Below are positions 784 to 52,250 of a DNA stretch of 52,812 bases, in pieces. The stretch lies in contig NC_068994.1 of the NCBI RefSeq assembly GCF_001194135.2, forward strand, positions 25,484,944-25,537,755, written 5' to 3'. How positions within the stretch are numbered: position 1 is the stretch's first letter; each line of letters opens with the position of its first letter. The DNA comes from Octopus bimaculoides (lineage: Eukaryota). The notes below the pieces were generated by a model. The model had not been told where the DNA came from. It saw only the letters and a list, made by a program, of their open reading frames with translations, and searched no databases. Position numbers and translations under genes: made by a program.

Positions 784-1315
784 GTATATACACCTGTGTG
801 TGTATGACGACTCATGGAGAAATTGTAGGAGGTAATGGACCCCAAAAAATTAGTAGAACAGATACTATGATAAATGATAACATAATGCAATACTGGCCTG
901 TTTCATTATGGAGAAACATTGTTGAAATAAGAATGATGGCATTGTGTGTATGCATAACAAGAACACTTACACACAATATAAAATCTTCTTTCCAAAAGAT
1001 TTGTGACATTCTGTTCTCAAAAAATATTTTAAAATCGTTCATAACTTGAGAAAATCTTCTTTAAATAATGTAACTGTATCAAGTATTTTTTTGCAAAAAC
1101 TTTTATCTATGTGCGTGTGTGTGCATATAAATATGCATAAATACATATGCACACATATATATTTATATATATGCATGCGTTTATGTATGAATGTAATCCT
1201 ATACATACTCCATCTGAACAAGAAACTTGGTAATTGCAGGTGGAATGTCTTTGATAAAAGGTTTACAGGGCTAAACAACATCAACAAAACTGAAGAAATG
1301 ACATTGAGAACTTAC

Positions 1316-1454
1316 ATTTGATCCAGAATCGACACAATAGTTTTGTGTTCAACTCCTTCAATCCACAGACGGCGTAGTTCATCTCTCTTACAGTGTAAAA
1401 GTGTCTTACAGGAACTGAGATCTTCTTTGATCTTTCGGATCTTGTCTCTAGATT
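1316..1454 (-). CDS. EXOC4: Exocyst complex component 4 (Sec8), internal coding exon, 139 nt, phase 1 to 2
   Basis: Reads (E)[45 protein letters not shown](I), close to the conserved EXOC4 segment [29 protein letters not shown]. Acceptor ttctatactcag, donor AT|gtaagt. Confidence 0.95.
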
Positions 1455-3242: not shown

Positions 3243-4182
3243 CTGTAGGTGACAAAAATAACAATATTATTAGTAGTATATTAATTTAAGTAGATAATTA
3301 TTATTCATAAAAAAATATTAGCACTATTATTCCAAGTTGACTACCAGGTTTAAGGCACTCAATGGTTGCACAAGAATAAACATGTAAAGTTTGGATGGTC
3401 TGCCTGACATGTTTACATGCCAGATTTGTTCACTACTGCCTTGGCAGATGTTTATCACAACTGTCAGAGCACTACCAAGGAAGGACATGAACAAGGAAAA
3501 CAGCACCATTAATTTTGTGCCAACTACTCAATAAAATACAGAATTACAGATTTTGGCCAAGATGCTTCAACTGAAAGTGCTGGGTTGGTGAAGAAAGTAA
3601 TATCTACATGAAGAGCAGAACATCAGTTTGGCTTGTCCTTTATGTGAAGAGAGTACAGAAACCATTTCCATGCACTCAATGTCACTTATTGCTGACATGC
3701 AGAGTTATATTGACCATCTGTTATCTGTTAGCATACATTGGATACATCTGTCAGCCAACGCCACCCTGAACATGAGCAGGGTAGAGCAGGCAAATCTCTT
3801 GCTGAAAGAAGATATATGAAGAAGATAGAGAAAAATTGAGGATAGTGCTTTTCTTCTAAGGCTATGCCTTTAAGTTGTTATTGTTGTTCATAATAACAGA
3901 TATATGCAGTTAAAATCAAAGGAATAGCAAACAGAAAATAGCTTGAGTTATAAGAACCCAACAGTGACTTTCTAAGGGTCTGGAGAAAAGGGAGGCAGAG
4001 AGGAGCCTTAACCAACTATAAAAAAATTATAACTTCTCTAGAAAAAGTTGCAATGATTACTGGTATCATAGATAGGAACTACAACAGGAGGAAACAAGGC
4101 ACAAAATACTTAAGGACAAGACAGAAGCAGAGATCACAAGATATCTGCACGGGAAGTGGAAAAACTTAGTTGAGATACATAC

Positions 4183-4271
4183 CAGAGACCATCTCAGAAA
4201 GGGTCTTGTCACTCTCCTGGAATGCTTTCTCAATACGAGTCTTCTCATTTTCCCGTTTGTCAAAATCAGAA
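4183..4271 (-). CDS. EXOC4: EXOC4 internal coding exon, 89 nt, phase 2 to 1
   Basis: Reads SDFDKRENEKTRIEKAFQESDKTLSEMVS, aligning with [29 protein letters not shown]. Acceptor ttcatttcag, donor G|gtatgt. Confidence 0.92.
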
Positions 4272-4479
4272 CTGAAATGAATAAAATGATTGGTTGATTA
4301 TTATTTTATGGTTGTTGTATGAATTTGTTAATGCTACGACAGTTTGTAGCCTATCACACAGCATATCATCATAATTTTGATGTCTTTCCATGTTTGCATA
4401 GGTCAGACAAGAGTATATTGGAGCAAAGTTTTTAATAACCAGGGACCTTTCCTGATGTCAACAACCATCTGATTCCAAG

Positions 4480-6030: not shown

Positions 6031-6129
6031 TTCTTTATATTTTAAAACAGGTATGTTTGAAAATAATTTACCAGTATTATTTTTTTTTTAACTTGGGTTT
6101 TGTTGGAACTACTTGAATCTTGTTTGAGT

Positions 6130-6600
6130 ATCTATTCCCATTTTCTTTATGTTCCTCTCAATATCTTTTGATACTGTCCCCCAGGGTCCCAACAATAATT
6201 AGTGCTATCTTCATCTTTTGCATCTTTCACATTTGGGCTATCTCGCATTTATGGGGATTATACACACCTACTTTTTCATCTTCCTTCTGAACTATCTATG
6301 AATCAATTGGGCATACAACACCAGCTGCAGAGCACACATGATTTACTTTGTCCTCCACTACTAAGTTCAGTTTGTTGTGCTGAAGCACCTGGCCCATTTG
6401 AATTAGGAATTTTGCAAGTCTCTGACTCAGTCACTCATTGTGATTTATGATTGTTCCATGTCTTACCTCTCTCTAACCTCCACCTTTCAATTTCTAATAC
6501 AGAGCTTTTGCTACCTCATCATGTTGCTACATCTTGTACTGGTTTCAGGCAAGTTAAGGACACTCATTTACAATATAAGCAATAGTTTCACCAAATTCAT
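6130..6600 (-). mobile_element. Non-LTR retrotransposon remnant with restriction-like endonuclease (RLE; R2/R4/NeSL group)
   Basis: Degenerate translation: ..CP*LA(Q)NQYK..HDEVAKALY*KL...KIALIIVGTLGTVSKDIERNIKKMGID, matching the RHD and IPIVIGALG motifs of RLE LINEs. Many stops. Confidence 0.65.
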
Positions 6601-6899: not shown

Positions 6900-7350
6900 G
6901 ATTTTTTACATTCTGAGTTCAAATTCCACTGAGACTGATTTTGCCTTTCATCCTTTTAGGTCAATAAAATTAAGTACCAGTTAAGCACTGAGATGATATA
7001 ATTGACTAGTTCCTTCTCCAAAAATTGTCAGCATTGTGCCAAAATTTTAAATCACTATTGTTACTATTAGCATACAGGACAAAATGCTTAGTGGCATTTT
7101 GCCTGTCTTTATGTTCAGAGTTCAAATTCTGCCAATGTCAACTTTGCCATTCATCCTTTCAGGGTCAATGAAATAAGTGCTACTGGGGTCAATGACCCTT
7201 CTACTATAGGCCTTGTGCCTATAGTAGAAGGGATTACTATTATTATTTTCAAGCAGAATTGTTAGTGTTTTAAACAAAATGCTTAGTGGCATTTCTTCTG
7301 TCTGTAAATTCTAAGTAAAGTTGCTGGTCTTGTGTCAAAATTTGAAACAA
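6900..7350 (+). mobile_element. Three consecutive decayed SINE copies
   Basis: Repeated gagttcaaattc(c)...tttgcc(t)ttcatcctttagggtcaat and aaaatgcttagtggcattt units. Same family as 29490-29696. Confidence 0.65.
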
Positions 7351-15557: not shown

Positions 15558-18354
15558 TTTTATATCCTGCCACAAGTTGATATAGATGAATTATGCAGTA
15601 GAGGTTTAATCAATGTGTTCACATGATGTATTTTGTGAGACTACCAAAACGCTCTCACTGACCTCTACTCTTTATAAGAGTTCGGCTAGTCTATTCTCCA
15701 ATCTGCCAGGATTGTCAATGGCTCTCGCCACATCTTCCCCTTTTGAGATTGACTTCCATTTGAAGTTAATATTTTTATTTATTCATTTTTCTAGTATCTT
15801 TTACACAATATCAGCCTGGAGTTTGAAATTAGGAATTTGAAATTTTTTTTTTTTTTTTTTTTTACATCGTCACATTTATAGCCTGATGACTCGTTGCCAG
15901 ATGTTGCAATGTAATTGTTACCCAGCTCTTAGGTAGTACTGTTTGCACACAGCACTCTTGTTTTTTATTGTACTAAGCACTCCTGTTTCTCATACTAAGC
16001 ACTCTTGTCTTTCACTCGAAGACATCTCCTCTAGCTGATTAACACTGCACAGCTGCATCCAATATATTGTGAGCAGGAGAAGCGAACCCTTACCACATTC
16101 TAGCGAGAGAACCAACACGCAGTAATTCGAGCAACTACCATTACACCACCTTACGGGTTTGGTGCGAGTTCAACATGCAACTAACACACTGACTCTTACT
16201 GACTTCTAGCAAACTGTCAAATGACTTCTGCTGACTTGCTGCCTTTTCACAGGACATAATAGGTATTTTACTGGTGGTCCTTTGGTTGCTGAACATGCAA
16301 CCTCTACCAGCTTTCACCAATTTCTCAATGTCCCGGTGCATGCAACAGGTTGTATTGCCTAAGAGCAACCTGACCTTTTTAACATGCTCAGCATGCTGAA
16401 CTTGAGATTCACTTTTTATGAGTATGTTGTCAAGGTAAGTTACAGCGAAATTCAAACCTGCAAGCGTAACGTCTATAATTTGTTGGAAATTGCCAGGTGC
16501 TACTTTTATACCAAAGGGGAGTCAATTAAATTTATACAACCCATTATGGTAATTTATTGTCAATAATTTTGAACATTCCTCATCAACTTTTACCTGCAAA
16601 TATGCTTCAGATAGGTCCAACTTTGAAAAAAATTTTCCTCCATTCAACTTCATGAAAATTTCTTCCAGACTTGGTAACAGGTAATTATATGGCATCAAAC
16701 ATTTGTTTAATCCCGTTGAGAAATCAGCACATACTTGGATTTTATTATTTTTTTTCTTGACATAAACTGTAGGGGATGCCCAAATTGTGTAATCAATTTT
16801 TTCAATAACACCAAGCTTTTCTTCGTTGACCTGTTTCACTGCTGCGAAAGGTACTGTTCTTTTTGGTATAAATACCGGTATAGAATTTTCTTTCATTGTT
16901 GTGAATAAACTTCAGGAAATTTTTTTTTTCTTTTTTTAAATTCTCCGACACCTTATTTGTACTGGCAGAAGAACCATTTACACTCTTACAGAAAATATTT
17001 ATTGGTAAGCCTCATAAGTTAAATAGCTTCATCCAAATGCAATTTTTTTCCTGAAACACCTCATGCAATTTTCGAAGTTTCCTTTAATCTAGGTTTTCCT
17101 ATCTTTCTCCATGTCTCTGTATTAATTATTGTGATATCACTGCCCATATCCAATTGTAACTTGATATTCACGTTATTCATTTTTATGGACACAATTTTCT
17201 TAGAACTTTTTTTAGCAATACATTTTTTCTAGAATTTATTTTGTTAGACCCTTTTTTTTTTGTGTTTCGCTATACACTGTGAGCTTTTATGTTCAATTTT
17301 TCCACAAGCAAAGCATTTACGATTTTTAAAAGGACGGTTACTTTTAAAATGTAAACTTCCGCAACCATAGCACAGATTTGGCCTAGACATTCGTTTTTCT
17401 TTTTTCTTATCCGTTTCAGGATGACACGCATGTATCCGAGAGCATTTTATCTGCGTCATGTCTTAAATTTATAATCCAATGGCATTCTTCAGCCACTGCC
17501 TGTAGAGTTAATTCTTGGTCCTGTTCTAATTTTTTTCATATATGGGAACATATATCAGCATCTTTCTTTGCTGTTAACTTCTGAACAAATCTGGGGTTAA
17601 TTCATTTAATTTGAATTTTTCACACTCTCTGTTAATGACCCCAGCATAGGTGACGAAATCTTCATCATCTTTTTTAACGAAATTTAAACATTGCCAACAA
17701 GTATTGAACAGGAAACTTCTTTCACTGAAAATTCTCAATAACAAATTAACCGATTTCTCACCTGATTTCTTCAGCAGAATATAGTTACAGTATTTTTTGA
17801 GTTTAGCAGGGGATAACTTTCTTGAAAGTAGTCGCACCTTCTTTTCATCATTCCAGTTTTTACAATCTCCTTTGATGATTTCTTCATATCTTCTAAAATA
17901 TGAAGAAAAAGTAGTACCTTCTTCTGGGTTATAAATAAATTCTCCAATTGGATTTGCCATGCCATCTGACAAGAATGAACCTGAAGCATTTTCAGTCTTC
18001 TTCAACTTTACTTCCAGTAACTGTTGGTATTGTTGTTGTTGCTATTGTAGTTGTTGCAACTGTACCACACGAGGCAACAAGTTTTCCATGTTAAATAATT
18101 TTTTCTTTGGTTTCGTGCCAAGAAAAAAAATTTAAACATCCTATGCAAGCTTCAAATATCTCGTCGCCACTTTTATATCCTGCCACAGGTTGATATAGAT
18201 AAGTTATGCAGTAGAGGTTTAATCAATGTGTTCACACGACATACTTCGCGAGACTACCAAAACGCTCTCTCCGACTACTACCGACCTCTTTTGTAAAAGT
18301 TCAGCTAGTACATTCTCCAATCCACCAGAAGTGTCAATAACTCTTGCCACAACA
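15558..18354 (-). mobile_element. Internally deleted Ty3/Gypsy (Mag/K02A2.6-like) LTR retrotransposon
   Basis: LTRs at 15558-15732 and 18171-18354, 5-bp TSD GTTAC (15553-57 and 18355-59), PBS TGGCGACGAG (18169-60) and PPT AAAAGGGGAAGA (15744-33). Gag with CYGC..H...C knuckle; RT with FSKLDLSEAYLQ and YLDNIL. Confidence 0.93.
15890..16251 (-). mobile_element. Second-family LTR plus PBS embedded in the Gypsy element
   Basis: Minus strand runs TGT...AATAAA...ttgcaaCA, followed by tcTGGCAACGAG (PBS-like). It is not similar to the host LTRs. Confidence 0.65.
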
Positions 18355-20060
18355 GTTACTTCTGAGGCAATTGTGAAATAAGAAGTGTTAGATTCAGCAG
18401 AATTAAAAGAAACAACTCATGGTGTTGATGAAAAATGTGCTTGACAGAGTTTTGATAAATGCTTGTGTTGCAACAGATAGAGGTCCTACAATGGTGGGTG
18501 AAAATGCAGTTAATTGCACTTATGAAAATGATTCCAGTTTTCCAGAGTTTCTCCCTGCTCATTGTATTATTCTTTGTAAACATCTGGTAGCTAAATATTT
18601 CACATATAAAGATGTTACAAAATCTGTCCTTGAAATTATGAACTTCATACGTACCAACAGTTCAGAAATTTTATTGATGAACTGGAGCTTGAAGGCTCCA
18701 TATATATCTTTCTATTGCATTGTGAGGTGGCTCTCAACCAGCAATGTTTTGAGTAGGTTTGTGGATCTGTTGGAGCCTATTATTACTTTTCTTAAAGAAA
18801 AGAGCCTATCCTCAACTGGAAAATGGTAAACGGATACAAGATCTGATGTTTTTAACTGATATAATGATGAATCATCTGCAAACTCAACTTCACACTTCAG
18901 GTGGAGGATAAGATTATTTGTGATCTAACTCTGAGTTTTCAATTTGCAGAGTAAAATAAGACCTTTTCAAAGAAACATACTGGCAGATTTTAGAAGGAGA
19001 GCAAATACATTCTCTGATACTGAAATAATTGATCATAAATTGGAAGTATACAAGCATAATTTACAAGGACTACTTGATAATTGCCTAATCAGGTTTGATG
19101 GCTTGCAGAAGATGAAGCCCTGTTTCATCTCGCTTGAAAATCCATTTATGGTCGATGTGGTCAATGATGGTTATCCATTTCTCATTCCTCTAGTTATGGA
19201 ATAACTATTGTGGATATATAACTTATGGAATTACACTTTCTAGTTGCATAAGGCATCTCCCTGCGTAAATACTGTGATGTATTCTACAAGCAGTCATTAT
19301 TTGTTCTTTTTTTTTTCTGTCTAGCCTGTTTTATTTAGTGTCCAGCTGTAACTTATTGCTGGGACAGCTAGAATATTGATGCCTTCAACTTTTTTTTTCA
19401 ATTAATTGTTTTATGTATTAATCTAATGAAAATAAGATAAATGCTGGAAAAACCTTTGTGCAACACACACTAGAATGGATAACAACACATTTCTCTAAAC
19501 TCTTTGATTAGTTTCTTTCTTCTATTTGAAAAGAGGAAATTTTCTTGCACTATTATTTAGCAACATACATCAGGCAATACAATATCTTTTCTCTTTTACT
19601 TTGTTTTCATTCCCTGGCATCACCTTACATATTTTGTCTAACTCCTCAACTGCACTGCTCAAAGGGTTTTTTTTAATTGAAACATTTATGTTTTTTTTTA
19701 CATGTATTGAAATATTTAAGCAAATTGCAGTTATTTATAATACTCTATTTGTTTTGTTTGTATGTTATACATTCTTTAATTCACTGGTCTCTAAGTTTTT
19801 GTCTATTTGTGTTTGATTTAATTCTCTTATCTCAGTTTCTTTATCATTTAGTGATATTAATTTTTCTCTTTTCAAATGTAGTGAATGGAACAAAGAGTTG
19901 AGCAGTAGATAAACTACATATCTTTCTTTACATTGTAGTTAAAAACTTGCCTCTATCTTAACTCTACCTTTCACATACACACATACATATACAAACAGAC
20001 ACACATATACATATACAAACAGATACACACATACATATACAAACAAATAAAATATCTTAC

Positions 20061-20101
20061 CTTGAAGACAAAGTCCTCACTATAGTCATCAAGAAATTAG
20101 A
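20061..20101 (-). CDS. EXOC4: EXOC4 coding micro-exon, 41 nt, phase 0 to 2
   Basis: Reads SNFLMTIVRTLSS(S), aligning with SGLLISVIRTLSTS. Acceptor cttctttttacag, donor AG|gtaaga. The phase joins the 4271 exon. Confidence 0.9.
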
Positions 20102-20530
20102 CTGTAAAAAGAAGTGAAACAAATAGAATATATTATTTTCTTCATTTTGTACTTCTTTGTAAAAAACATTTTCATTCTCCCTCTTCTTGAAAATTTGCTT
20201 CGCAATGAAAACCGGTTAGAGAAATCTTTATTAAAATATGCTTCCAGTTTAGCATTCTGCCTTATTATTATTTTTCATTTTCCTATTATTTCTCCACGTG
20301 TGGTTAACACAACCCCACTATTTACTGACTTATATATATATATATATATATGTTCATATAATGATATCTACCAAATGTATTGGTAAGATAAAACATGTAA
20401 TCGTTACCAAAATATCAAAAATTCGTCCACAAAGGTCTATAGTAAACTCCTTATGAATCGATCTCCTTGGTTATATATCAAAAAATTTAAATAAGAGCTT
20501 TGACGCTAAATCCATATATATTAAAGGTTA

Positions 20531-20618
20531 TTACCTATGTATACATTTCTGTATAAGGTCAAATTCAACTCTTAATTCAAGTTAAATAAGTAAATTACTT
20601 TACACATCCTCAGGGTAA
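20531..20618 (-). ncRNA. Type I hammerhead ribozyme (PLE-associated, palindromic stem III)
   Basis: UUACC-CUGAGGA-UGUGUAAAG...CCUUAUACA-GAAA-UGUAUACAU-A|GGUAA: 5-bp stem I, at least 7-bp stem II, and palindromic stem III AUGUAUACAU. Predicted cleavage is between 20536 and 20535. Confidence 0.85.
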
Positions 20619-20933
20619 AAAGTAAACACCAAAAAAGATTTATAATCTCTAAGGCTGATCCATATTCAAAATTCCTCCTGAATAATAGTCCGTCTAAGGG
20701 AGAAAACCCTAATAATATTATTAATTATAAACAATCAAGTAATACAAATTATTGAACACTGGTAATAAATTCTAAACTAATGGAAATCTATATTATATTA
20801 TCTCTAGAAACTTTAGTAAATAAGTACAAATATACAATTAGATTATTAGTAATAAGAAATCATACAGTTAATATATCCTGTCTTTTAAACCTAATATTAT
20901 ATTATAATACCCAATCATACTGAAATTTATAAT

Positions 20934-21823
20934 TTATTTAAACCAGAAAATCGTATGCCTAAGAAAATGGCTACATCTGAAAGCATTATATGTGAGTTTA
21001 TTTATTAACTTACCCTTAGAAAATAATATAAAAAATAATTCTAGATTACACAACGAGCAATATCTCTTACCTTTCTCATAAGGGAAAGACTTTCCAATAA
21101 TTGACCATTCTAATGAATATTGCTTTTTTTGTTCCTTCAGTTCCCAAATAAATTTACTAAGACTAGTATTCGACATTTTACTTCTATCTCTACATGTATT
21201 ATAATGATTTGATATTCGTTTACAAATTTGTCCTGAAGAACAACCCACGTATATGTTAACATCTGTTTGGGTCGTTAGCTTACATTGGTAAACTATATTC
21301 TTCAATCTAGCATTTGGGCCTTCAAACTTCAATCTTCTGGGGTTAACCTCTGTTACTGTAATCCTAGTACGATTATCATTATTATTATTATTATTTATAT
21401 CAGGGTTCTCATCACTATCCTCCCCAATTCCCTTTGATTTAAGTATTTTAAAATTATGAGCTGCAATTATTTGGGCTAAGTTCTTAGTGTTTGAGAAACT
21501 AAACCTAATGCTATGTGTATTAATAATTTTACCATAATGTGAATTCTTTGGGAAATATCTACTTATCACCTCTCTAAACTGTGCAATCAAATTCGATTTA
21601 ACATTTCTACCAAAAGGGATTATGAACCATACATTATTATCTTTAGTGTTATCGCAGTTATTTGTATAATTCTTAAAAAATTTTAAATTACCAATGTTAT
21701 GTTTATGAAAATCTCTGGGTTTATTTTCCATATTTCCTCTAAACTTATTCTTAAACTTATCATTCTTATAAGAATAATATATAAGAATAATAATGATAAG
21801 AATAATAAGTTTAAGAATGTAGT
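20934..21823 (-). mobile_element. Penelope-like element C-terminal region: uninterrupted GIY-YIG endonuclease ORF (265 aa from ATG at 21731)
   Basis: VWFIIPFG...RYFPKNSHYGKIINTHSIRFSFS...IVYQC..YVG...KRISNH...SLSKFIWELK...CSLCNLE...LINK...CSH, the typical PLE linker-plus-endonuclease layout. No stops over about 890 nt. Confidence 0.9.
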
Positions 21824-22007
21824 GTCTGCCTTTTACTCTGAATGAGAGGCCCTTTGTCACCAGCAGAGGTAAGNNNNNNNNNNNNNNNNNNNNNNNNNNN
21901 NNNNNNNNNNNNNNNNNNNNNNNNNNNNNNNNNNNNNNNNNNNNNNNNNNNNNNNNNNNNNNNNNNNNNNNNNATAACACAAAATTCTCATTCTTCAATT
22001 GCATGTA

Positions 22008-22036
22008 ACACGGGCAACGCCGGATATCTCTGCTAG
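22008..22036 (+). mobile_element. Helitron-like 3' terminus
   Basis: GC-rich hairpin (acacgggcaacgccgga) followed about 8 nt later by CTAG then T. The rest of the element is hidden by the gap at 21874-21973. Confidence 0.6.
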
Positions 22037-22042
22037 TATATA

Positions 22043-22350
22043 TATATTAATCAAAGTGTACAATATTATATATCCATTACGGGCAATCTTATCAATCAGT
22101 TTCAGCCTAGGGGTTCAATGGAGTGTTAGGTAACAGTCCAATTATGTAACCCTGCACTCTTCAGAGATGGTATTAGTGGGATAAAATACAGTGACTGCTC
22201 TCTATTGTTCAAGGTGAACAGACACATTCCATAATAGCTCTCTCTGAAGAGCACAAGGTTACATAATTGGACTGTTGAACCGCTAGTGCAAAACTGATTG
22301 GTAAGATCAGCTGTAATAGATCTATAATACTGTGCACATCAATTAATATA
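22043..22350. mobile_element. Fold-back MITE-like element (~310 bp near-palindrome)
   Basis: Arms align across about 120 bp, e.g. aacagtccaattatgtaaccctgcactcttcagaga with tctctgaagagcacaaggttacataattggactgtt. The ends fall in TA-rich sequence. Confidence 0.75.
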
Positions 22351-28633: not shown

Positions 28634-29489
28634 GTTTAACACCTTTATAAGAAAGGAAACAGAAGTGTCTGTGATAATCATCATGGGATATCACTTCTGT
28701 CTATTGCTGGTAAGATTCTTGCTTGACTCATTCAAAATTAAGAGCTGTTCATGGTGTTCGTTGACCTAAGGCCTTCAACACTGTTAACTGACAAGCACTA
28801 TGGAAAGTTCTGAAAAAGCTTAGTATACCTGACAAAATGTTGAATGTTATCATCTTCTTTCATGAGGGAATGAAAGCTGCTGTCTTGTTACAAACAGAAC
28901 AAAGCAAGGTTGTGTCACAGCTCATTTTGTTTGCACTCTTCCTATCAGTGATGATGAAGTATGCTTTTGGTGACTTAGAAAGGGTGTTAAATTCCAGTTT
29001 CAAATTAGTGGACTATTCAGTCATGTGTTTCAATACCAAAACACTGTTACACACCAGTATCATTTGCGATTTGCTTTTTGCAGATGCTGCTGAACTAGTA
29101 GCAGCCTCTTTAGAGGAAACTCAGGAACTTCTAGACCAGTTTTGTGTTGCATGTAAAGCATTTGGTTTGACCATCAACATAAAGAAGACAAAAGTGATCC
29201 ACCAACCTTGCCCTACTCCTAAGCAAATTCGAGGTGTCAAGCAGAGGCTACTGCTTCACAATTTCCAACACTCATATACAGATTGATAGGAAAAACTTAA
29301 AGTGAAGTATTGACATATCTTGATAGTAAAGAGAACTTGAGTGCTTACCTTGATGATGAAATCACCATCCATCTTGCAAAAGCAACCAATGCATTTGGCA
29401 AACTTTGTCATTGCCTATGGAATGAAAGGGACATTAAACTGGACACTAAAGTACAGGTCTATAAAGCTGCTATTATTACTACTCCCTTA

Positions 29490-36914: not shown

Positions 36915-39900
36915 TAGTGCTACATAAATGTGAAGATGGTAACATGAAGGCCATGGTTCATACGTCATGCTTGCTCCTGCAGAAAAATATTACAGCCATG
37001 TTGCAAAAGAGGCTCTAGCGATAATTTTTACTGTAAAAAAAATTTCAGATTTTTATACGGCAGAAATTTTCAATTACAGACTGATCATCGTCAGTTATTA
37101 TCTATTTATGAATAAAAGAAAGGAATTTCATATGCATACTACTAATAGGTTGTAATGCTGGGGTACTATATTACTAAACTATGATCTTAAAATGGAGTTT
37201 ATACCATCTAAGAAATTAGGACATGCTGATTGTTTATCAAGATAGATATAAAAAAATACTGAACCATTTGAGGATATCGTGATTGCTGTGTTGTGAGCAG
37301 AAAATGAAATTAAAAATGTTTTATGTAATGTCATATGTGAATTACCAGTTACATTACAAGACATAAAAGTAAAAGTGGAAAACAAATTTATCGAAAATAT
37401 GAAAGAAATGCTGAGGGCTGAAGAAAAAGATATAAAAATATTCCTTTTGCTAAAAGCAACACAAATACAAACCTGTTCTCAATTTGTGACAATATGTTAA
37501 TGTACACACAACAAGTCATTGTGCCAGCCACACTACAGAAGCATTTACTAAAGGAATTTCACATTGGTCACCTAGGGATTTCAAGAATGAAATTGTTAAT
37601 GCGAAGTTATATATATATTGGCCAAGAATGGACCATGACACTGAAGAACTAGTAAAAGCATGCAAAGGTTGTGCACTAGCAACAAAATCACTTACCACAA
37701 AATGGCAACTGTGGCCAAAAAACAGATATCCCATGGTCCAGACTGCATTTTGATTATGCAGGTCCACTTAATGGTTCATATTACCTGGTTGTGGTAGACA
37801 GTTTTTCTAAGTGGCCTGAAGTGCATAAGTGTAAAAAGCCAACATCTATGGTTACAGTAAGTTTTTTATTGGGCTGGCAACTAAGTTAACGCCGTTTTTT
37901 TAAATTTTGGAATTCATTGCGTTTTTAAAGTTTGGAATCTATTTTTGAATCATTTTGGAATCTTTTTTTTTTTTTCCAAGTTAATTTTAGTTAATTTTTG
38001 TTTATTTTCAGATCATTAAAATGGAATGTCAAATTAAGAAAAACAAGCATTTTCAACACCTCCTTTTTGCTTTTAATCAAGGTTCTAAGGCTGCAAAAGC
38101 TGCTCGCAACATTTGTGCTGTGTATGGAGAGGGTGTCATAGCTGAACGAACCACTCGTGATTGGTATGCCAAGTTAAAAACTGGAAATTTTGACCTCAAA
38201 GACGCACTTCGTTCTGACCGTCCAGTTGAGTTTGATGAAGAGCGATTAAACCAACTTTTGCACGAAAATTCTCGTCAAACAACAAGGGAACTGGCAGAGA
38301 AAATGGAATGCTCCCACACTGCTATAGAGAAGCATCTTCACTCGATGGGAAAGATTCAGAAGTATGGAGCATGGATTCCACATGCTTTAAGTGACAACAA
38401 CAAAAATCAATGAGCCACAATCTCCACTGCTTTGCTTGCTTGTCACCACTCAATTCATGGTCACTAACATTGATTTCTTTACCGAATCGTTACTGGCGAC
38501 GAAAAATGGTGCCTGTACATCAATATGAAGCAGCTTAAAGAATGCCTTCACCCCGGTAAACAAGCGACACCGTGCGTAAAACAAGATCTAAAACGATGTT
38601 GTGTGTATGGTGGGACTGGGAAGGGATTATCCATTATGAATTGCTTGAACAGAACCAAATGGTCAACATGGAACTCTATGTTCAGATGGAACAACTCAAC
38701 ACAGCTATTCAAGAGAAAAGACCTAATCAGCAACATGGAGTTCTTCTGCTGCATGACAACGCCCACCCTCATATCACCAATATGACCAAGGAAGCCATTC
38801 AAATGCATGGCTGGGAAGTGCTGCCACACCCACCATACTCTCCTGATTTGGCACCAATGGATTTCTACCTCTTTCAAATGCTATGCACGGAGTTTCATTC
38901 AATACTGATGCAGAATTGAGAGCTTGGTTGGATCAATTTTCCAAGCCGAAATTGGGTGATTTCTACCAACAAGGTATTGAAAATCTTGTTGAACGTTGGG
39001 AAGAAGTTGTAAACAACAAGGGTGAATACATTATTGATTAATTAGTTGTTATTTTTTTTATTAAACCTTGTAAAAAATAAAAATTTTAAAAAACGGCAGG
39101 AACTTAGTTGCTAACCCAATACATGAACTGTTTGCCAAATATGGTATTTGTGATACCATTATGTCTAATACTAATAATGGAATGTGACCACTCTGCCATA
39201 TCATCCTGGGTCAAATGGACAGGTGGAGTGCTTTGTCAATGCTTTTAAGAGGGCTTTAAAGAAGGTGAACAATGAAGTAATGGATGATCTAGCACTTCAA
39301 CAATTCCTAAAAGTATACCAAGTAACACCTAATCCAAATACCCTACCCTGTCTTGAATGTCACCTGCAGAAGTAATGTTCGCTTGTGAGATGAGATCTGT
39401 CTTTGACAAGTTGTTACCAAGTAAAAAACAGAAAAATGGTGAACAACAATTATAATTCAAACTTTTTCAAGATAGGTGACAAAGTTTTTTGAAAACATAT
39501 AGAAATGGTAAAGCAAGCTGGGAAGATTGTGTAATTATTAAACAAATTGGGAAAATGTTATTCTTGGTAAAAGGAAAAAATTTCAAACATAAAAGACATA
39601 TAAAGCAACTTAAAAAAAGATTTACGGAAGAAATGGTCATGAGAGATGAAATTCCCATGGAAGTTTTTTATGACACCTTTGAGGTACCAACACCCAAACA
39701 AATTGAAACTACACGATCAAGTATCAGAAAAAGGAAAAGAATGGAAATTCTGGAATTAGACCTTAAGCATAAGAGTTATTAAACTCTAGACAGAGTTTAA
39801 TTCTCAAAAAGAGGGAAAGTTATGGAAGGGTCCTGACCACCCCCACATGACTGAAAGTGGACTAATGCATTTCAATAGAATAAAGAAACTGTGTGAACAT

Positions 39901-40035: not shown

Positions 40036-40999
40036 TACTTAAATTATATATACATACATACACACACATATATGTATAATTTGTTAAACACCTATAAGGA
40101 GGTGCTTTTCCCTTGGCCAGGAGGAGCCAATGTCATCAGATGGTATCTAATGTTCATCAGTTGTCTCGACTCTGAACCATAACTCCCTCCTATTGGTGGG
40201 TCAGCAGAAGTGGCCCAGTCACTGCTCCTCATCTCCTCCTGGCTTCCAGCTTAACTCATCTCTCTTGCTCCAAAGTCAACAAGAGGCTCTTTCAGCTGCT
40301 TCTCCCATCCTGTGCATAACCACCCTTCACTCCTTACCTCTCATTCCAATACATATATATATACTAACTGACGTACCCGGTAATTCCCAGGAAAGTGGGG
40401 ATTATCCCTTGGTTCCGTTCTCATAATTGTTTCGCTAATCCAGTAACAACAATACAAAATGTGTATTCCTTAAAAGCATTGTACTGGATAAATTGCGAAA
40501 ATAACTCAAATAGTTCAAATACTAAGAAATAAGCATACTCAATTTGATTTATACGAAATTTACAAACTTACAGGAACAACAGTGGTTTATTGACACAGAT
40601 GGTTGTAAATTTTTCCCATATTGAAGTTTGATAAGTTGAAAAAGTTATTTTATAGTTTACAGTTAGCAACTGGGGTTGCTGTGTATGCAAATAATTACCC
40701 AAATGAGGGGTACTCCATTAGCTACTTGTCAAGCCTGACGAGTACCCTCGTTTGGGTAATTACTACTTCCAAGATTCTGCTAGCTAGGAAATATATGTAG
40801 ACTGGATTTTATCCACTCCATCCCCTAAATTAGGATATATATATTTGCAGCAGTGTCTTATCCCTCAAATCTAAGGATTGATTTCTTCTGAATGCATATT
40901 TGGACCATCAATGTCAGTGATGAATGTGGCTAATGAGGTCAATCATTGCATAGAGCTCATGATTACATTGGCCACATGCAAATGGTTGTGGTTGCTGCT

Positions 41000-50479: not shown

Positions 50480-51328
50480 CAAATATTCGGCTACAGTGGT
50501 AACATCGACAACACCCCCTCCACATCCTGCAATAACATTACCAACGCCACCCCCACCCCCACCTTTGCCAACACGAACACCAACGGCCTCAGCAACACTA
50601 TCGTTGACTGCAGCACCAGCAACAGTGACATTGTCAATCCCCGCAGCATCATTGTCGACAGCACCTGCAACAACAACAATAACAGCAGCAGCAGCAACAC
50701 TAGTAGCAGTGATGGCAGCAACAGCAGCAACATCAACATCGGCAGGCTTAGTAACACCAACACATGTACCACCAGCAACACACGCAGAGGTAGTAATACT
50801 ACCAATGCAACCACCACCTCCAGTGTCACCACCACCAACAGCCCCAGCTCCAGCAACACCAGAATCAACACCATCAACAGCAGCAGCAGTAGCAGCAACA
50901 ACAACAGCAATGGTAGGCACAGCACCGACTCCACACATCCAAGGAAATACATTGGATGCCCGGGAACTTCCTTTAAGAAACGCCTTTCCAACCATAGATC
51001 CTCCTTCAGGATCCTAGAAAGGAGATGTGCAACATCGCTGGCCAGCCATATCTGGAAACTGAAGGAAGATGGAATTCCATATGCGATAACATGGAAAATC
51101 CTCCATCGTCTGGGTCCATACATAAATGGAACAAAACGCTGCAAGCTATGCATAGCCGAATACATGGAAATCCTGAAAAAGTCACATGTACCAGGGTCCA
51201 TACTGAACTCCAGAACGGAGATATTCGGGCCGTGCTTGCATTTCAGAAGGTTTCTGTTAGTGTTTTGGGAACTGCATAATAGCAATATTAGCGGTATTAA
51301 CAATAATTACACCACAGCTAGATATTGA
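50480..51328 (+). mobile_element. Penelope-like remnant: S/N/T-rich linker fused in frame to the C-terminal part of a GIY-YIG nuclease
   Basis: Open frame of 282 codons with no upstream ATG. YIG at 50948 is followed by CPGTSFKKRLSNHRSSF...SLASHIWKLK...RCKLCIAE...ILNSRTE...CLHF. The GIY half is missing. Confidence 0.85.
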
Positions 51329-51764: not shown

Positions 51765-52000
51765 ATAGCTATATTCTTTTATTCTTTTACTTGTTTCAGT
51801 CATTTGACTGCGGACATGCTGGAGCACTGCCTTTAGTTGAACAAATCAACCCCAGGACTTATTTTTTGTAAGCCTAGTACTTATTCTATTAGTCTGTCTT
51901 GCTGAACCGCTAAGTTATGGGGACATAAACACACCAGCATCGGTTGTCAAGCGATGTTGGGGGGACAAACACAGACACAAACATATACATACATACATGA

Positions 52001-52042
<42 letters not shown>

Positions 52043-52120
52043 GGCTTCTTTCAGCTTTCGTCTACCAAATCCACTCACAAGGCTTTGGTTGGCTCGAGGC
52101 TATTGTAGAAGACACTTGCC
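51765..52120 (-). mobile_element. tRNA-derived SINE (same family as 43856 and 45245)
   Basis: ctaccaaatccactcacaaggctttggttggctcgaggctattgtagaagacacttgccc, internal (TA)n and the family 3' end. Confidence 0.85.
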
Positions 52121-52202
52121 CATTAATGTACGTTTGTATGTATATATACATGTGTGTATGGATATACATATATATATATATATATATATGTGTATTTCTA
52201 TA

Positions 52203-52244
<42 letters not shown>

Positions 52245-52250
<6 letters not shown>

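What the first reader, a model, noticed from the sequence alone, without database searches (positions are those of the whole stretch)
20531..20618. Intact hammerhead ribozyme on the sense strand of an EXOC4 intron, about 430 nt upstream of an exon
All core nucleotides are present (CUGAGGA, GAAA, UH = AUA) with stems I, II and III paired. Stem III is a perfect 10-nt palindrome (AUGUAUACAU), as in PLE minimal hammerheads that can act as dimers. The base of stem II is an unusual U-A pair. Because it is co-oriented with EXOC4, nascent pre-mRNA could self-cleave between the candidate first exon and the 41-nt micro-exon. By analogy with the intronic CPEB3 ribozyme this might tune EXOC4 output, or favour the upstream nested terminal exon at 34.3 kb (inference).
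Basis: partly seen in the sequence, partly recalled or inferred. Interest (0 to 1): 0.85.

Follow-up and report, generated by a model that had tools for sequence, protein, structure and literature searches.

The report
Retrotransposon hammerhead ribozyme inside EXOC4 intron
The hammerhead motif is real, but it is the standard ribozyme carried at the 3' end of a broken Penelope-like retrotransposon that landed in an EXOC4 intron, so it is most likely an ordinary transposon relic and not a regulator of the gene.

Summary
On the minus strand, 20618->20531 reads UUACC|CUGAGGA|57-nt helix II|GAA|AUGUAUACAU|A|GGUAA. It is sense to EXOC4 and lies 430 nt upstream of a verified 41-nt micro-exon (20101-20061). 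A strict descriptor matches once in the window, against about 6e-4 expected by chance.

The motif is not free-standing. It lies 316 nt downstream of the stop codon of a co-oriented ORF remnant (20934-21731). That ORF is the linker plus GIY-YIG endonuclease of a 5'-truncated Penelope-like element (PLE) of the published "Hydra" clade. A (TA)10 run, this clade's usual insertion target, follows 180 nt further on.

Relatives show the same layout. In 17 of 30 metagenomic Hydra-clade loci a hammerhead of the same architecture sits 66-449 nt after the ORF. The two closest copies found, both in Octopus sinensis, carry hammerheads with the same unusually long helix II (54-55 nt).

There are caveats:
- Rfam finds nothing here.
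- A clade-specific covariance model gives this copy only 7.5 bits.
- Thermodynamic folding puts the GAAA core in a competing hairpin; the hammerhead fold is about 0.03% of the ensemble.

Verdict: a new member of a known kind (PLE hammerhead). The proposed role in tuning EXOC4 is unsupported and could not be tested here.

The parts
20531..20618 (-). Type-I hammerhead motif: helix I 20618-20614 / 20535-20531; CUGAGGA 20613-20607; helix II 20606-20550; GAA 20549-20547; palindromic helix III 20546-20537; A17 at 20536; predicted cleavage 20536|20535
   Evidence: Sequence read directly. Only descriptor match in the window. Chance about 6e-4 per window. Clade covariance model R1 aligns it end to end but scores it only 7.5 bits.
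20550..20606 (-). Unusually long helix II (57 nt): 7-bp base plus a distal imperfect hairpin
   Evidence: Constrained fold. The two Octopus sinensis relatives have 55-nt and 54-nt helix II. Metagenomic clade members have 10-25 nt.
20540..20555 (-). Competing hairpin UAUACA-GAAA-UGUAUA that sequesters the 3' strand of helix II, the GAAA core and half of helix III
   Evidence: Pair probabilities 0.85-0.98 in the monomer ensemble. The hammerhead fold is about 0.03% of the ensemble.
20934..21731 (-). ORF remnant: linker plus C-terminal GIY-YIG endonuclease of a Hydra-clade Penelope-like element. The RT part is missing (5'-truncated). Stop codon at 20934-20936.
   Evidence: 3127 homologues at E<=1e-3, with the match at the C-terminus of ~700-760-aa proteins that carry RWK, DKT and YRDDG motifs. 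tblastn homology spans 21740-20949. AF2 model pLDDT 78, >90 in the C-terminal half; Foldseek top hits are T4 EndoII, Hpy188I and I-TevI.
20352..20933 (-). 3' untranslated part of the element (the part that forms the pseudo-LTR in tandem copies); contains the hammerhead
   Evidence: Lies between the ORF stop and the (TA)n run. The same layout is seen in O. sinensis copy L001: ORF end, 618 nt, hammerhead, about 190 nt, (TA)n. blastn finds 68% identity between window 20320-20422 and L001 7373-7483, E 5e-8, but this includes the TA run.
20331..20351 (.). (TA)10.5 microsatellite at the 3' junction: the likely insertion target
   Evidence: Tandem Repeats Finder. Hydra-clade PLEs insert into (TA)n (PMC8557442). 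(TA)n also follows the hammerhead in L004, L001 and L062.
21767..21818 (.). AT-rich tandem repeat (TATAAGAATAATAA)n at the presumed 5' truncation junction. Sequence of normal GC content resumes at 21819, and a 100-N assembly gap follows at 21874-21973.
   Evidence: Protein homology stops at about 21740.
20061..20101 (-). EXOC4 41-nt micro-exon (SNFLMTIVRTLSS), 430 nt downstream of the hammerhead and 230 nt downstream of the (TA)n junction
   Evidence: tblastn to human EXOC4 residues 21-37. Acceptor ...ttttacag| and donor |gtaag read directly.
4175..4273 (-). EXOC4 exon (human residues 34-66); fixes the gene orientation
   Evidence: tblastn E 8e-6.
1315..1452 (-). EXOC4 exon (human residues 86-131); fixes the gene orientation
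   Evidence: tblastn 65% identity, E 5e-16. Homologues carry Pfam PF04048 (Sec8 N-terminal domain).

Best explanation
The motif is the hammerhead ribozyme that Penelope-like retrotransposons (PLEs) carry in their terminal repeat. This copy belongs to a cephalopod sub-lineage of the 'Hydra' clade of PLEs.

What is in the window (shown): the element, about 21766->20352 on the minus strand, is 5'-truncated. The reverse transcriptase is gone. What remains is the linker, the GIY-YIG endonuclease ORF, the 3' untranslated region with the hammerhead, and the (TA)n target. It happens to sit in sense orientation in the EXOC4 intron upstream of the 41-nt exon.

How it works in an active element (inferred from the literature): elements are arranged in partial tandems. 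Two hammerheads pair through their palindromic helix III to form an active dimer, which is thought to process the long element transcript. Cleavage is weak in vitro, and in one studied PLE it needed the element's own protein.

What follows for this copy (inferred): it is a solo copy with no partner, no RT and no promoter of its own. It is carried passively in EXOC4 pre-mRNA and most likely cleaves little or not at all.
For: 1. A co-oriented ORF ends 316 nt upstream.
- It has 3127 homologues. The match lies at the C-terminus of ~700-760-aa proteins.
- A model of one full-length relative matches telomerase TERT, LINE-1, R2 and other reverse transcriptases at probability 1.0.
- A model of the window ORF matches the GIY-YIG nucleases T4 EndoII, Hpy188I and I-TevI.

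2. Hydra-clade PLEs insert into (TA)n and universally carry hammerheads. Here (TA)10 lies 180 nt 3' of the motif.

3. In 57 metagenomic Hydra-clade loci my descriptor finds 26 hammerheads on the ORF strand and 7 on the other strand in 177 kb.
- 17 of 30 loci with enough flank have one 66-449 nt after the ORF.
- The architecture is uniform and matches the window motif: helix I 4-6 bp, a 9-10-nt palindromic helix III starting with A and ending with U, and H17 mostly A.
- Nine of the descriptor hits, eight of them among the 26 used for the model, have a U after A9 and a non-G-C closure of helix II.

4. A covariance model built only from the metagenomic hammerheads finds hammerheads at the corresponding place in the two nearest relatives, both from Octopus sinensis.
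- L001 scores 22.9 bits, E 5e-5. L062 scores 17.4 bits, E 2e-3.
- Both have a 54-55-nt helix II like the window's 57 nt.

5. Helix I differs between the three copies but stays paired: UUACC/GGUAA, AUUUUC/GAAAAU and CUUUC/GAGAG. Helix III stays palindromic: AUGUAUACAU, ACAUAUGU, ACAUGUGU.

6. The intron also holds other transposon remnants.
Against: - The clade covariance model scores the window motif only 7.5 bits. That is E about 10 over the whole window and 0.03 over 151 nt.
- It deviates at positions that are invariant in the 26 training sequences: 15.2-16.2 is U-A instead of C-G.
- It has U-A instead of G-C at 10.1-11.1.
- nhmmer with the O. sinensis hammerhead regions does not retrieve it, so DNA-level homology of the ribozyme itself is not statistically shown.
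- The 16/22 identity in the distal part of helix II is only suggestive.
- Rfam is negative.
- The window ORF has lost the linker cysteines and lacks the RT. Its assignment to the clade therefore rests on the endonuclease part and on its homologues.
Confidence: 0.85

Rival explanations
1. Domesticated intronic ribozyme. The hammerhead, whatever its origin, has been co-opted. It cleaves nascent EXOC4 pre-mRNA between exon 1 and the 41-nt micro-exon and so tunes EXOC4 output or isoform choice.
For: - Sense orientation and closeness to a micro-exon are verified.
- The catalytic core is complete.
- There is precedent: retroelement-like type-I hammerheads are conserved in introns of RECK, CTCL and DTNB in amniotes (PMC6155905).
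Against: - The motif still sits in a recognisable transposon body with its ORF open, which points to a fairly recent, unmodified insertion.
- It is a solo copy of a dimer-dependent design. Single PLE min-hammerheads showed no detectable cleavage in vitro (PMC4209133).
- Predicted folding puts the hammerhead at about 0.03% of the ensemble, because a UAUACA-GAAA-UGUAUA hairpin competes.
- There are no conservation data.
- In Xenopus, retrozymes are under-represented in introns (bioRxiv 10.64898/2026.07.22.740005).
Confidence: 0.05
2. Chance match. AT-rich DNA rich in TATACA/TGTATA-type repeats happens to satisfy a loose hammerhead descriptor, and the nearby PLE ORF is a coincidence or has lost its true ribozyme.
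For: - Rfam is negative.
- The clade model gives only 7.5 bits, with about 30 equal or better hits in the window.
- nhmmer finds no homology.
- The helix III palindrome is the kind of sequence that local microsatellites generate.
- Fold z-score is only -1.5.
Against: - The strict descriptor is expected about 6e-4 times per window.
- Requiring in addition the correct strand and a position within the 582-nt 3' region of a PLE ORF brings this to roughly 3e-6 (my arithmetic).
- The motif lies where the clade's hammerhead is expected.
- It shares the rare long helix II with the nearest relatives.
Confidence: 0.06
3. Transposon relic with side-effect activity. The solo hammerhead has no adaptive role but still cleaves a small fraction of EXOC4 pre-mRNA. 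This could happen through the 3-bp helix III hairpin, through pairing in trans with transcripts of other copies, or with help from PLE protein.
For: - The core is complete and the helices can form.
- In a Poseidon PLE the hammerhead cleaved only when the element's protein was added (PMC11167929).
- Many related copies exist in octopus genomes.
Against: The same folding and dimer arguments as above. No expression data are at hand.
Confidence: 0.12

Closest known systems
Minimal hammerheads of Penelope-like elements (Cervera & de la Pena 2014, PMC4209133)
   Same: - Type I topology.
- Short helix I (4-6 bp) and enlarged helix II.
- Short palindromic helix III that implies action as a dimer.
- Located in the element's terminal repeat on the sense strand.
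- Mostly found as solo motifs next to truncated elements.
   Different: - Helix II is far longer (57 nt).
- The closing pair of helix II is U-A, not the highly conserved G10.1-C11.1.
- The 'extra nucleotide after A9' can pair here.
Hydra clade of C-terminal-endonuclease PLEs (Craig et al. 2021, PMC8557442)
   Same: - Homologues carry RWK, DKT, the CxCX5C linker and a GIY-YIG domain without CCHH.
- Insertion at (TA)n.
- A hammerhead is present.
- Hosts are aquatic invertebrates, including molluscs.
   Different: - The window copy is 5'-truncated (no RT).
- It and its cephalopod siblings have lost the linker cysteines.
- Their hammerhead has a 54-57-nt helix II, against 10-25 nt in the metagenomic members.
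Conserved intronic hammerheads of amniotes (HH9/HH10 in RECK, CTCL, DTNB; reviewed in PMC6155905)
   Same: Type-I hammerhead of retroelement type lying in sense orientation in an intron of a protein-coding gene.
   Different: - Those are stand-alone motifs, conserved across classes of vertebrates, with stable helices and loop-loop contacts.
- This one is still embedded in its transposon, conservation is unknown, and it is predicted to misfold.
CPEB3 HDV-like intronic ribozyme
   Same: A self-cleaving motif in an intron, co-oriented with the host gene.
   Different: - A different ribozyme class (HDV-like double pseudoknot).
- Monomeric, and conserved across mammals.
- Not part of a recognisable transposon.
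Metazoan non-LTR retrozymes (PMC7229834; bioRxiv 10.64898/2026.07.22.740005)
   Same: Type-I hammerheads derived from, or related to, PLE terminal repeats.
   Different: - Retrozymes are short tandem repeats without an ORF that give circular RNAs.
- Here there is a single copy with an adjacent PLE ORF, and no tandem repeat.

Membership tests
Hammerhead ribozyme, type I | Conserved core: C3 U4 G5 A6 N7 G8 A9, G12 A13 A14, A15.1-U16.1, and H17 not G | tested here: met
   CUGAGGA ... GAA A...U A read directly.
Hammerhead ribozyme, type I | Three helices around the core, with helix I open | tested here: met
   Helix I 5 bp. Helix II 7 bp plus a distal hairpin. Helix III is 3 bp plus a UAUA loop as a monomer, or 10 bp between two copies.
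Hammerhead ribozyme, type I | Match to the curated Rfam hammerhead covariance models | tested here: not met
   No match at gathering score or at E<=10 in 751 nt. Related PLE copies are also missed by Rfam, so this test is insensitive for this subclass.
Hammerhead ribozyme, type I | G10.1-C11.1 closing pair of helix II | tested here: not met
   U-A here. 11 of the 26 clade hammerheads used for the model also lack a standard pair at 10.1-11.1, mostly U.U.
Hammerhead ribozyme, type I | Self-cleavage at the UH site | not testable with these tools
   Needs an in vitro or in vivo assay. The thermodynamic model predicts the hammerhead fold at about 0.03% of the monomer ensemble.
PLE minimal hammerhead | Lies in the terminal-repeat / 3' region of a PLE, on the ORF strand | tested here: met
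   316 nt after the stop of a co-oriented PLE endonuclease ORF, 180 nt before (TA)n. The same holds in 17 of 30 clade loci and in L001, L062 and L004.
PLE minimal hammerhead | Short palindromic helix III / loop 3 (dimer design) | tested here: met
   AUGUAUACAU is a perfect 10-nt palindrome. Clade members have 8-10-nt palindromes.
PLE minimal hammerhead | Significant score with a model of the clade's own hammerheads | tested here: inconclusive
   R1 gives 7.5 bits: E 0.03 in 151 nt, about 10 in the whole window. The O. sinensis relatives score 22.9 and 17.4 bits.
PLE minimal hammerhead | Compensatory changes among related copies | tested here: inconclusive
   Helices I and III differ but stay paired among the window, L001 and L062. 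That is only three copies, and their homology is not shown by nhmmer. Metagenomic set: 88% of cells paired against 61% in shuffles, but those sequences were selected by a pairing descriptor.
Hydra-clade Penelope-like element | RT related to telomerase RT, with RWK and DKT motifs | tested here: inconclusive
   Absent from the window copy (5'-truncated). Present in full-length homologues, whose model matches TERT and other RTs. Pfam RVT_1 does not detect them.
Hydra-clade Penelope-like element | C-terminal GIY-YIG endonuclease lacking the CCHH motif | tested here: met
   Y..Y.G..R..H..E..N are conserved. Foldseek top hits are T4 EndoII (probability 0.99), Hpy188I and I-TevI. Pfam and PDB sequence searches are negative.
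Hydra-clade Penelope-like element | CxCX5C zinc-finger linker before the endonuclease | tested here: not met
   The cysteines are replaced in the window ORF and in its cephalopod-lineage siblings P0001, P0010 and P0026 (P0026 keeps a single Cys). They are present in the wider family.
Hydra-clade Penelope-like element | Insertion into (TA)n | tested here: met
   (TA)10.5 at 20331-20351. An AT-rich repeat lies at the 5' junction, 21767-21818.
Domesticated intronic ribozyme (HH9/HH10- or CPEB3-like) | Orthologous conservation across species, independent of a transposon body | not testable with these tools
   No cephalopod genome collection can be searched by DNA here. The exact-protein look-up of the window ORF found nothing.
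Domesticated intronic ribozyme (HH9/HH10- or CPEB3-like) | Stable active fold as a single copy | tested here: not met
   Monomer MFE is -15.4 against -11.5 kcal/mol for the hammerhead fold. The competing hairpin has probability >0.85. This is prediction only.

The most novel reading that the evidence does not exclude
A solo hammerhead left by a truncated Penelope-like element has been co-opted. It cleaves EXOC4 pre-mRNA co-transcriptionally just upstream of a 41-nt micro-exon. Cleavage could be gated by the competing GAAA-tetraloop hairpin, by pairing in trans with transcripts of sibling elements, or by PLE protein. This would be a transposon-derived ribozyme switch for exocyst expression in a cephalopod.
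Probability: 0.04. Interest if true: 0.7.

Novelty: new member of a known kind. Interest (0 to 1): 0.22.

Why it matters
The main value is as a correct annotation. Hammerhead motifs in invertebrate introns should be checked for a Penelope-like-element context before any regulatory role is proposed.

Smaller points:
- It documents Hydra-clade PLEs with hammerheads in octopus-lineage genomes. This sub-lineage has a 54-57-nt helix II and has lost the linker zinc-finger cysteines.
- Rfam's hammerhead models miss these ribozymes.
- At least one NCBI octopus protein name ('myb-like protein I') hides a PLE remnant.

If the rare domestication reading were true, it would be the first host-gene ribozyme described in a cephalopod.

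Tried and rejected
- Rfam at gathering and at E<=10, on the window and on related loci: no hammerhead anywhere. Rfam is insensitive to this subclass.
- Pfam on the ORF and on ten homologues: nothing.
- Word-indexed protein search with the ORF alone: nothing. The exhaustive HMMER search was needed.
- PDB sequence searches with the endonuclease and full-length profiles: nothing relevant. Fold comparison was needed.
- My first descriptor missed the O. sinensis hammerheads because their helix II closing pairs are imperfect. The covariance model found them.
- blastn of the region against the window: no second copy of the motif, only (TA)n matches.
- nhmmer with the O. sinensis hammerhead regions against the window: no hit at the candidate. 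It gave weak non-significant hits at 6393-6416, 38062-38097 and 40720-40802.
- The 40.7-kb site has CUGACGA...GAAAUAUAUGUA but no helix I. Rejected as a hammerhead.
- Retrozyme (tandem-repeat) reading: rejected. There is no tandem repeat of the unit.
- Naiad/Chlamys PLE reading: rejected. The endonuclease is C-terminal in the homologues, and those clades lack canonical hammerheads.
- Exact-sequence look-up of the window ORF: not on record.
- Logan contigs for P0010, P0045 and P0087: too short to reach a hammerhead.
- Supplementary files of PMC8557442, which list Hydra hammerheads: not held.
- The search for related loci with the 17-sequence alignment failed for lack of a conserved stretch. A 5-sequence alignment worked.

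Full report
**1. The observation**

On the minus strand, 20618->20531 reads UUACC CUGAGGA (57 nt) GAA AUGUAUACAU A GGUAA. All eleven core positions of a hammerhead are present.
- Helix I has 5 bp.
- The base of helix II has 7 bp starting with U-A, followed by a long distal hairpin.
- Positions 15.1-16.1 form a perfect 10-nt palindrome.
- The predicted scissile bond is 20536|20535.

A descriptor with helix I >=5, II >=4 and III >=3 bp matches this site and no other in the window on either strand. It matched 0 of 400 block-wise dinucleotide shuffles and 1 of 1675 block-wise first-order Markov simulations, about 6e-4 per window. This is rare for one window but not for a whole genome of gigabase size.

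Several results count against the motif:
- Rfam reports no hammerhead, at curated thresholds or at E<=10 in a 751-nt search.
- The unconstrained fold is not the hammerhead: -15.4 against -11.5 kcal/mol, z -1.5.

**2. The host gene**

- It finds an exon at 1452-1315 on the minus strand (residues 86-131, 65% identity, E 5e-16). Database homologues of that exon carry the Sec8 N-terminal Pfam domain.
- Further exons lie at 4273-4175 (residues 34-66, E 8e-6) and at 20101-20061.
- The last one is exactly 41 nt. It encodes SNFLMTIVRTLSS and is flanked by a polypyrimidine tract plus 'acag' and by 'gtaag'.

Exon 1 was not located. The micro-exon has an acceptor site, so the sequence upstream of it is intronic unless exon 1 hides in the intervening 430 AT-rich bases, which I consider unlikely.

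**3. What surrounds the motif**

The motif sits in a 26%-GC block. An ORF on the same strand ends 316 nt upstream of it (20934-21731 from its ATG).
- Pfam and the word-indexed protein search found nothing for this ORF.
- An exhaustive HMMER search found 3127 homologues. The match sits at the C-terminus of ~700-760-aa proteins.
- Those proteins carry RWK, (K/S)ADKT, FDIxxFYPSI, YRDDG and SNHP. They then have IWFxPPF, a CxCX5C linker, and a GIY-YIG-type Y...Y(I/V)G...R...H...E...N domain.
- This is the published description of the 'Hydra' clade of Penelope-like elements: RWK, DKG changed to DKT, CxCX5C linker, C-terminal GIY-YIG without CCHH, short elements, insertion into (TA)n, and canonical hammerheads universally present (PMC8557442).

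Fold comparison supports both halves.
- A model of a full-length relative (pLDDT 86) matches telomerase TERT, LINE-1 ORF2p, R2 and bacterial RTs at probability 1.0.
- A model of the window ORF (pLDDT 78, >90 in the C-terminal half) has the GIY-YIG nucleases T4 EndoII, Hpy188I and I-TevI as its best matches.

Boundaries of the copy:
- It lacks the RT. Protein homology starts at about 21740.
- An AT-rich tandem repeat lies at 21767-21818. Sequence of normal composition resumes at 21819, before a 100-N gap at 21874-21973.
- On the 3' side, (TA)10.5 at 20331-20351 lies 180 nt beyond the motif.

The simplest reading is a 5'-truncated element of about 1.4 kb inserted at a TA-rich microsatellite.

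**4. Relatives carry a hammerhead at the same place**

Locus L004 (ENA assembly) has GUUCGC CUGAUGA U-CGUUCC GUGA GGACG-U GAA ACACAGUGU A GCGAAU. It starts 15 nt after the stop codon, and (TA)n follows about 100 nt later.

A scan of metagenome contigs gave 57 loci encoding Hydra-clade endonucleases.
- In these plus the earlier loci (177 kb), a relaxed descriptor finds 26 hammerheads on the ORF strand and 7 on the other strand.
- 17 of the 30 loci with at least 150 nt after the ORF have one 66-449 nt downstream.
- Their design is uniform: helix I 4-6 bp, helix II 10-25 nt, a 9-10-nt palindromic helix III of the form A-CAG..CUG-U, and H17 mostly A.
- Nine of the descriptor hits, eight of them among the 26 used for the model, have a U directly after A9 and a U before G12 in place of the G-C closing pair. 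The window's 'unusual U-A' is a variation on a recurring feature of this clade.

On the alignment of the 26 hammerheads used for the model (23 on the ORF strand and 3 on the opposite strand, probably inverted copies), 88% of cells pair against 61% in shuffles, and 11 of 14 pairs show double changes. This is inflated because the sequences were chosen by a pairing descriptor.

**5. The nearest relatives**

The closest proteins are from Octopus sinensis:
- P0057, named 'myb-like protein I' by NCBI but in fact the RT thumb plus linker of a PLE;
- P0001.

A covariance model built only from the metagenomic hammerheads (R1) finds a hammerhead downstream of each.
- L001 7165-7250: 22.9 bits, E 5e-5, 618 nt after the ORF, with (TA)n about 190 nt later.
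- L062/L063 4530-4614: 17.4 bits, E 2e-3, 588 nt after the ORF, with (TA)n 46 nt later.
- Both have a helix II of 54-55 nt, like the window's 57 nt and unlike all metagenomic members.

The three copies compare as follows:

| Copy | Helix I | Helix III |
|---|---|---|
| Window | UUACC/GGUAA | AUGUAUACAU |
| L001 | AUUUUC/GAAAAU | ACAUAUGU |
| L062 | CUUUC/GAGAG | ACAUGUGU |

The sequences differ but pairing is kept. The 3' tail next to the (TA)n shows 68% identity between the window and L001, E 5e-8, though this is partly driven by the TA run.

**6. Weaknesses**

- R1 aligns the window motif end to end but gives it only 7.5 bits. That is E 0.03 for 151 nt, about 10 for the whole window, and it does not appear in the whole-window list.
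- The loss comes from the long insert and from 15.2-16.2 being U-A, where all 26 training sequences have C-G.
- nhmmer with the O. sinensis hammerhead regions does not retrieve the site. DNA homology of the ribozyme itself is therefore not statistically shown.
- The 16/22 identity in the distal part of helix II is only suggestive.

My case therefore rests on four things together: a rare descriptor match, the correct strand and position relative to a PLE ORF and its (TA)n target, the shared unusual helix II length, and the documented rule that this clade carries hammerheads.

**7. Likely activity**

PLE minimal hammerheads are thought to act as dimers formed between tandem copies. Single motifs showed no detectable cleavage, and dimers only weak cleavage, in vitro (PMC4209133). 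In a Poseidon element, cleavage needed the element's protein and was dispensable for target-primed reverse transcription in vitro (PMC11167929).

The window copy is solo; no second copy is present. In addition, the 3' strand of helix II, the GAAA core and half of helix III form a hairpin, UAUACA-GAAA-UGUAUA (20555-20540).
- Its pair probabilities are 0.85-0.98.
- The hammerhead fold is about 0.03% of the monomer ensemble.
- The predicted dimer does not use the hammerhead pairing either.

These are secondary-structure predictions without tertiary contacts, so they argue against efficient self-cleavage but do not exclude it.

**8. Verdict**

This is a genuine hammerhead motif. It belongs to a truncated Hydra-clade Penelope-like element, and it lies in an intron that also holds other transposon remnants. 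It is a new member of a known kind.

The EXOC4-tuning hypothesis is not excluded, but nothing supports it beyond orientation and proximity. The decisive tests are orthologous conservation, RNA end mapping, and cleavage assays as monomer and as dimer. None of these can be run here.

Noticed in passing
window 50930-51262 (+): A second Hydra-clade PLE endonuclease remnant (...YIGCPGTSFKKRLSNHRSSF...CKLCIAE...). It is preceded by CAG/CAA-type low complexity and followed by TA/TG-rich microsatellites at about 51960-52250. No hammerhead follows it (best + strand score 5.5 bits).
   Followed up: partly
window 20934-21731 (-); proteins P0001, P0010, P0026: The cephalopod-lineage copies have replaced the cysteines of the CxCX5C linker zinc finger that the rest of the clade keeps (P0026 retains a single Cys). 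The GIY-YIG catalytic residues are retained. Possibly a sub-lineage with altered targeting, or one that is non-autonomous.
   Followed up: partly
L001 5001-6056 (Octopus sinensis CM016882.1): The NCBI protein named 'myb-like protein I' (P0057) is the RT-thumb plus linker part of a PLE copy. The endonuclease continues in another frame at 6107-6547, and a hammerhead follows at 7165-7250. The name is a mis-annotation.
   Followed up: yes
L001 7165-7250; L062 4530-4614; window 20550-20606: The octopus-lineage PLE hammerheads have a 54-57-nt helix II, against 10-25 nt in 26 metagenomic clade members. This variant is not mentioned in the papers I read.
   Followed up: partly
L004, L015, L016, L018, L020, L026, L034, L036, L056: A recurrent subclass of Hydra-clade hammerheads has a U after A9 and a U before G12 (a U.U juxtaposition) in place of the G10.1-C11.1 pair.
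   Followed up: partly
window 19543-19579 (-): UAUUGCCUGAUG... matches the consensus helix I plus 5' core of one metagenomic hammerhead family (11.9 bits, E 0.46) but has no GAAA or helix III. Not significant. It could be a decayed fragment or chance.
   Followed up: partly
window 40720-40802 (+): CUGACGA, 49 nt, then GAAAUAUAUGUA, with a short (TA)n about 35 nt downstream. It resembles the octopus hammerhead layout (nhmmer E 1.7), but helix I cannot form. Possibly a very decayed 3' fragment of another copy.
   Followed up: partly
window 16522-16896 (-), 17574-18005 (-), 28837-29286 (+): Other retroelement remnants in the same gene region: weak RVT_1 matches (E about 1e-3) and a DUF7083 domain (E 7e-14).
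   Followed up: no
window 22043-22350 (+): Nested inverted repeats: 36-nt arms 92% complementary at 22132-22167 / 22241-22276, and 76-nt arms 78% complementary at 22043-22118 / 22275-22350. The structure looks like a MITE and lies just beyond the assembly gap. Window 21974-22048 is 87-88% identical to a repeat in O. sinensis loci L062/L063.
   Followed up: no
window 21874-21973: A 100-N assembly gap lies only about 55 nt from the 5' junction of the PLE fragment. PLE insertions are known to break short-read assemblies (PMC8557442), so part of the element or an inverted partner copy could be hidden there.
   Followed up: no
window 20342-20364, 51970-52217; L001 715-1271: (TA)n and (TG/TA)n microsatellites give sub-threshold Rfam matches to mir-297, mir-3149, mir-466 and mir-1277 (up to 53.7 bits, against gathering scores of 81-100). 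These are low-complexity false positives.
   Followed up: yes
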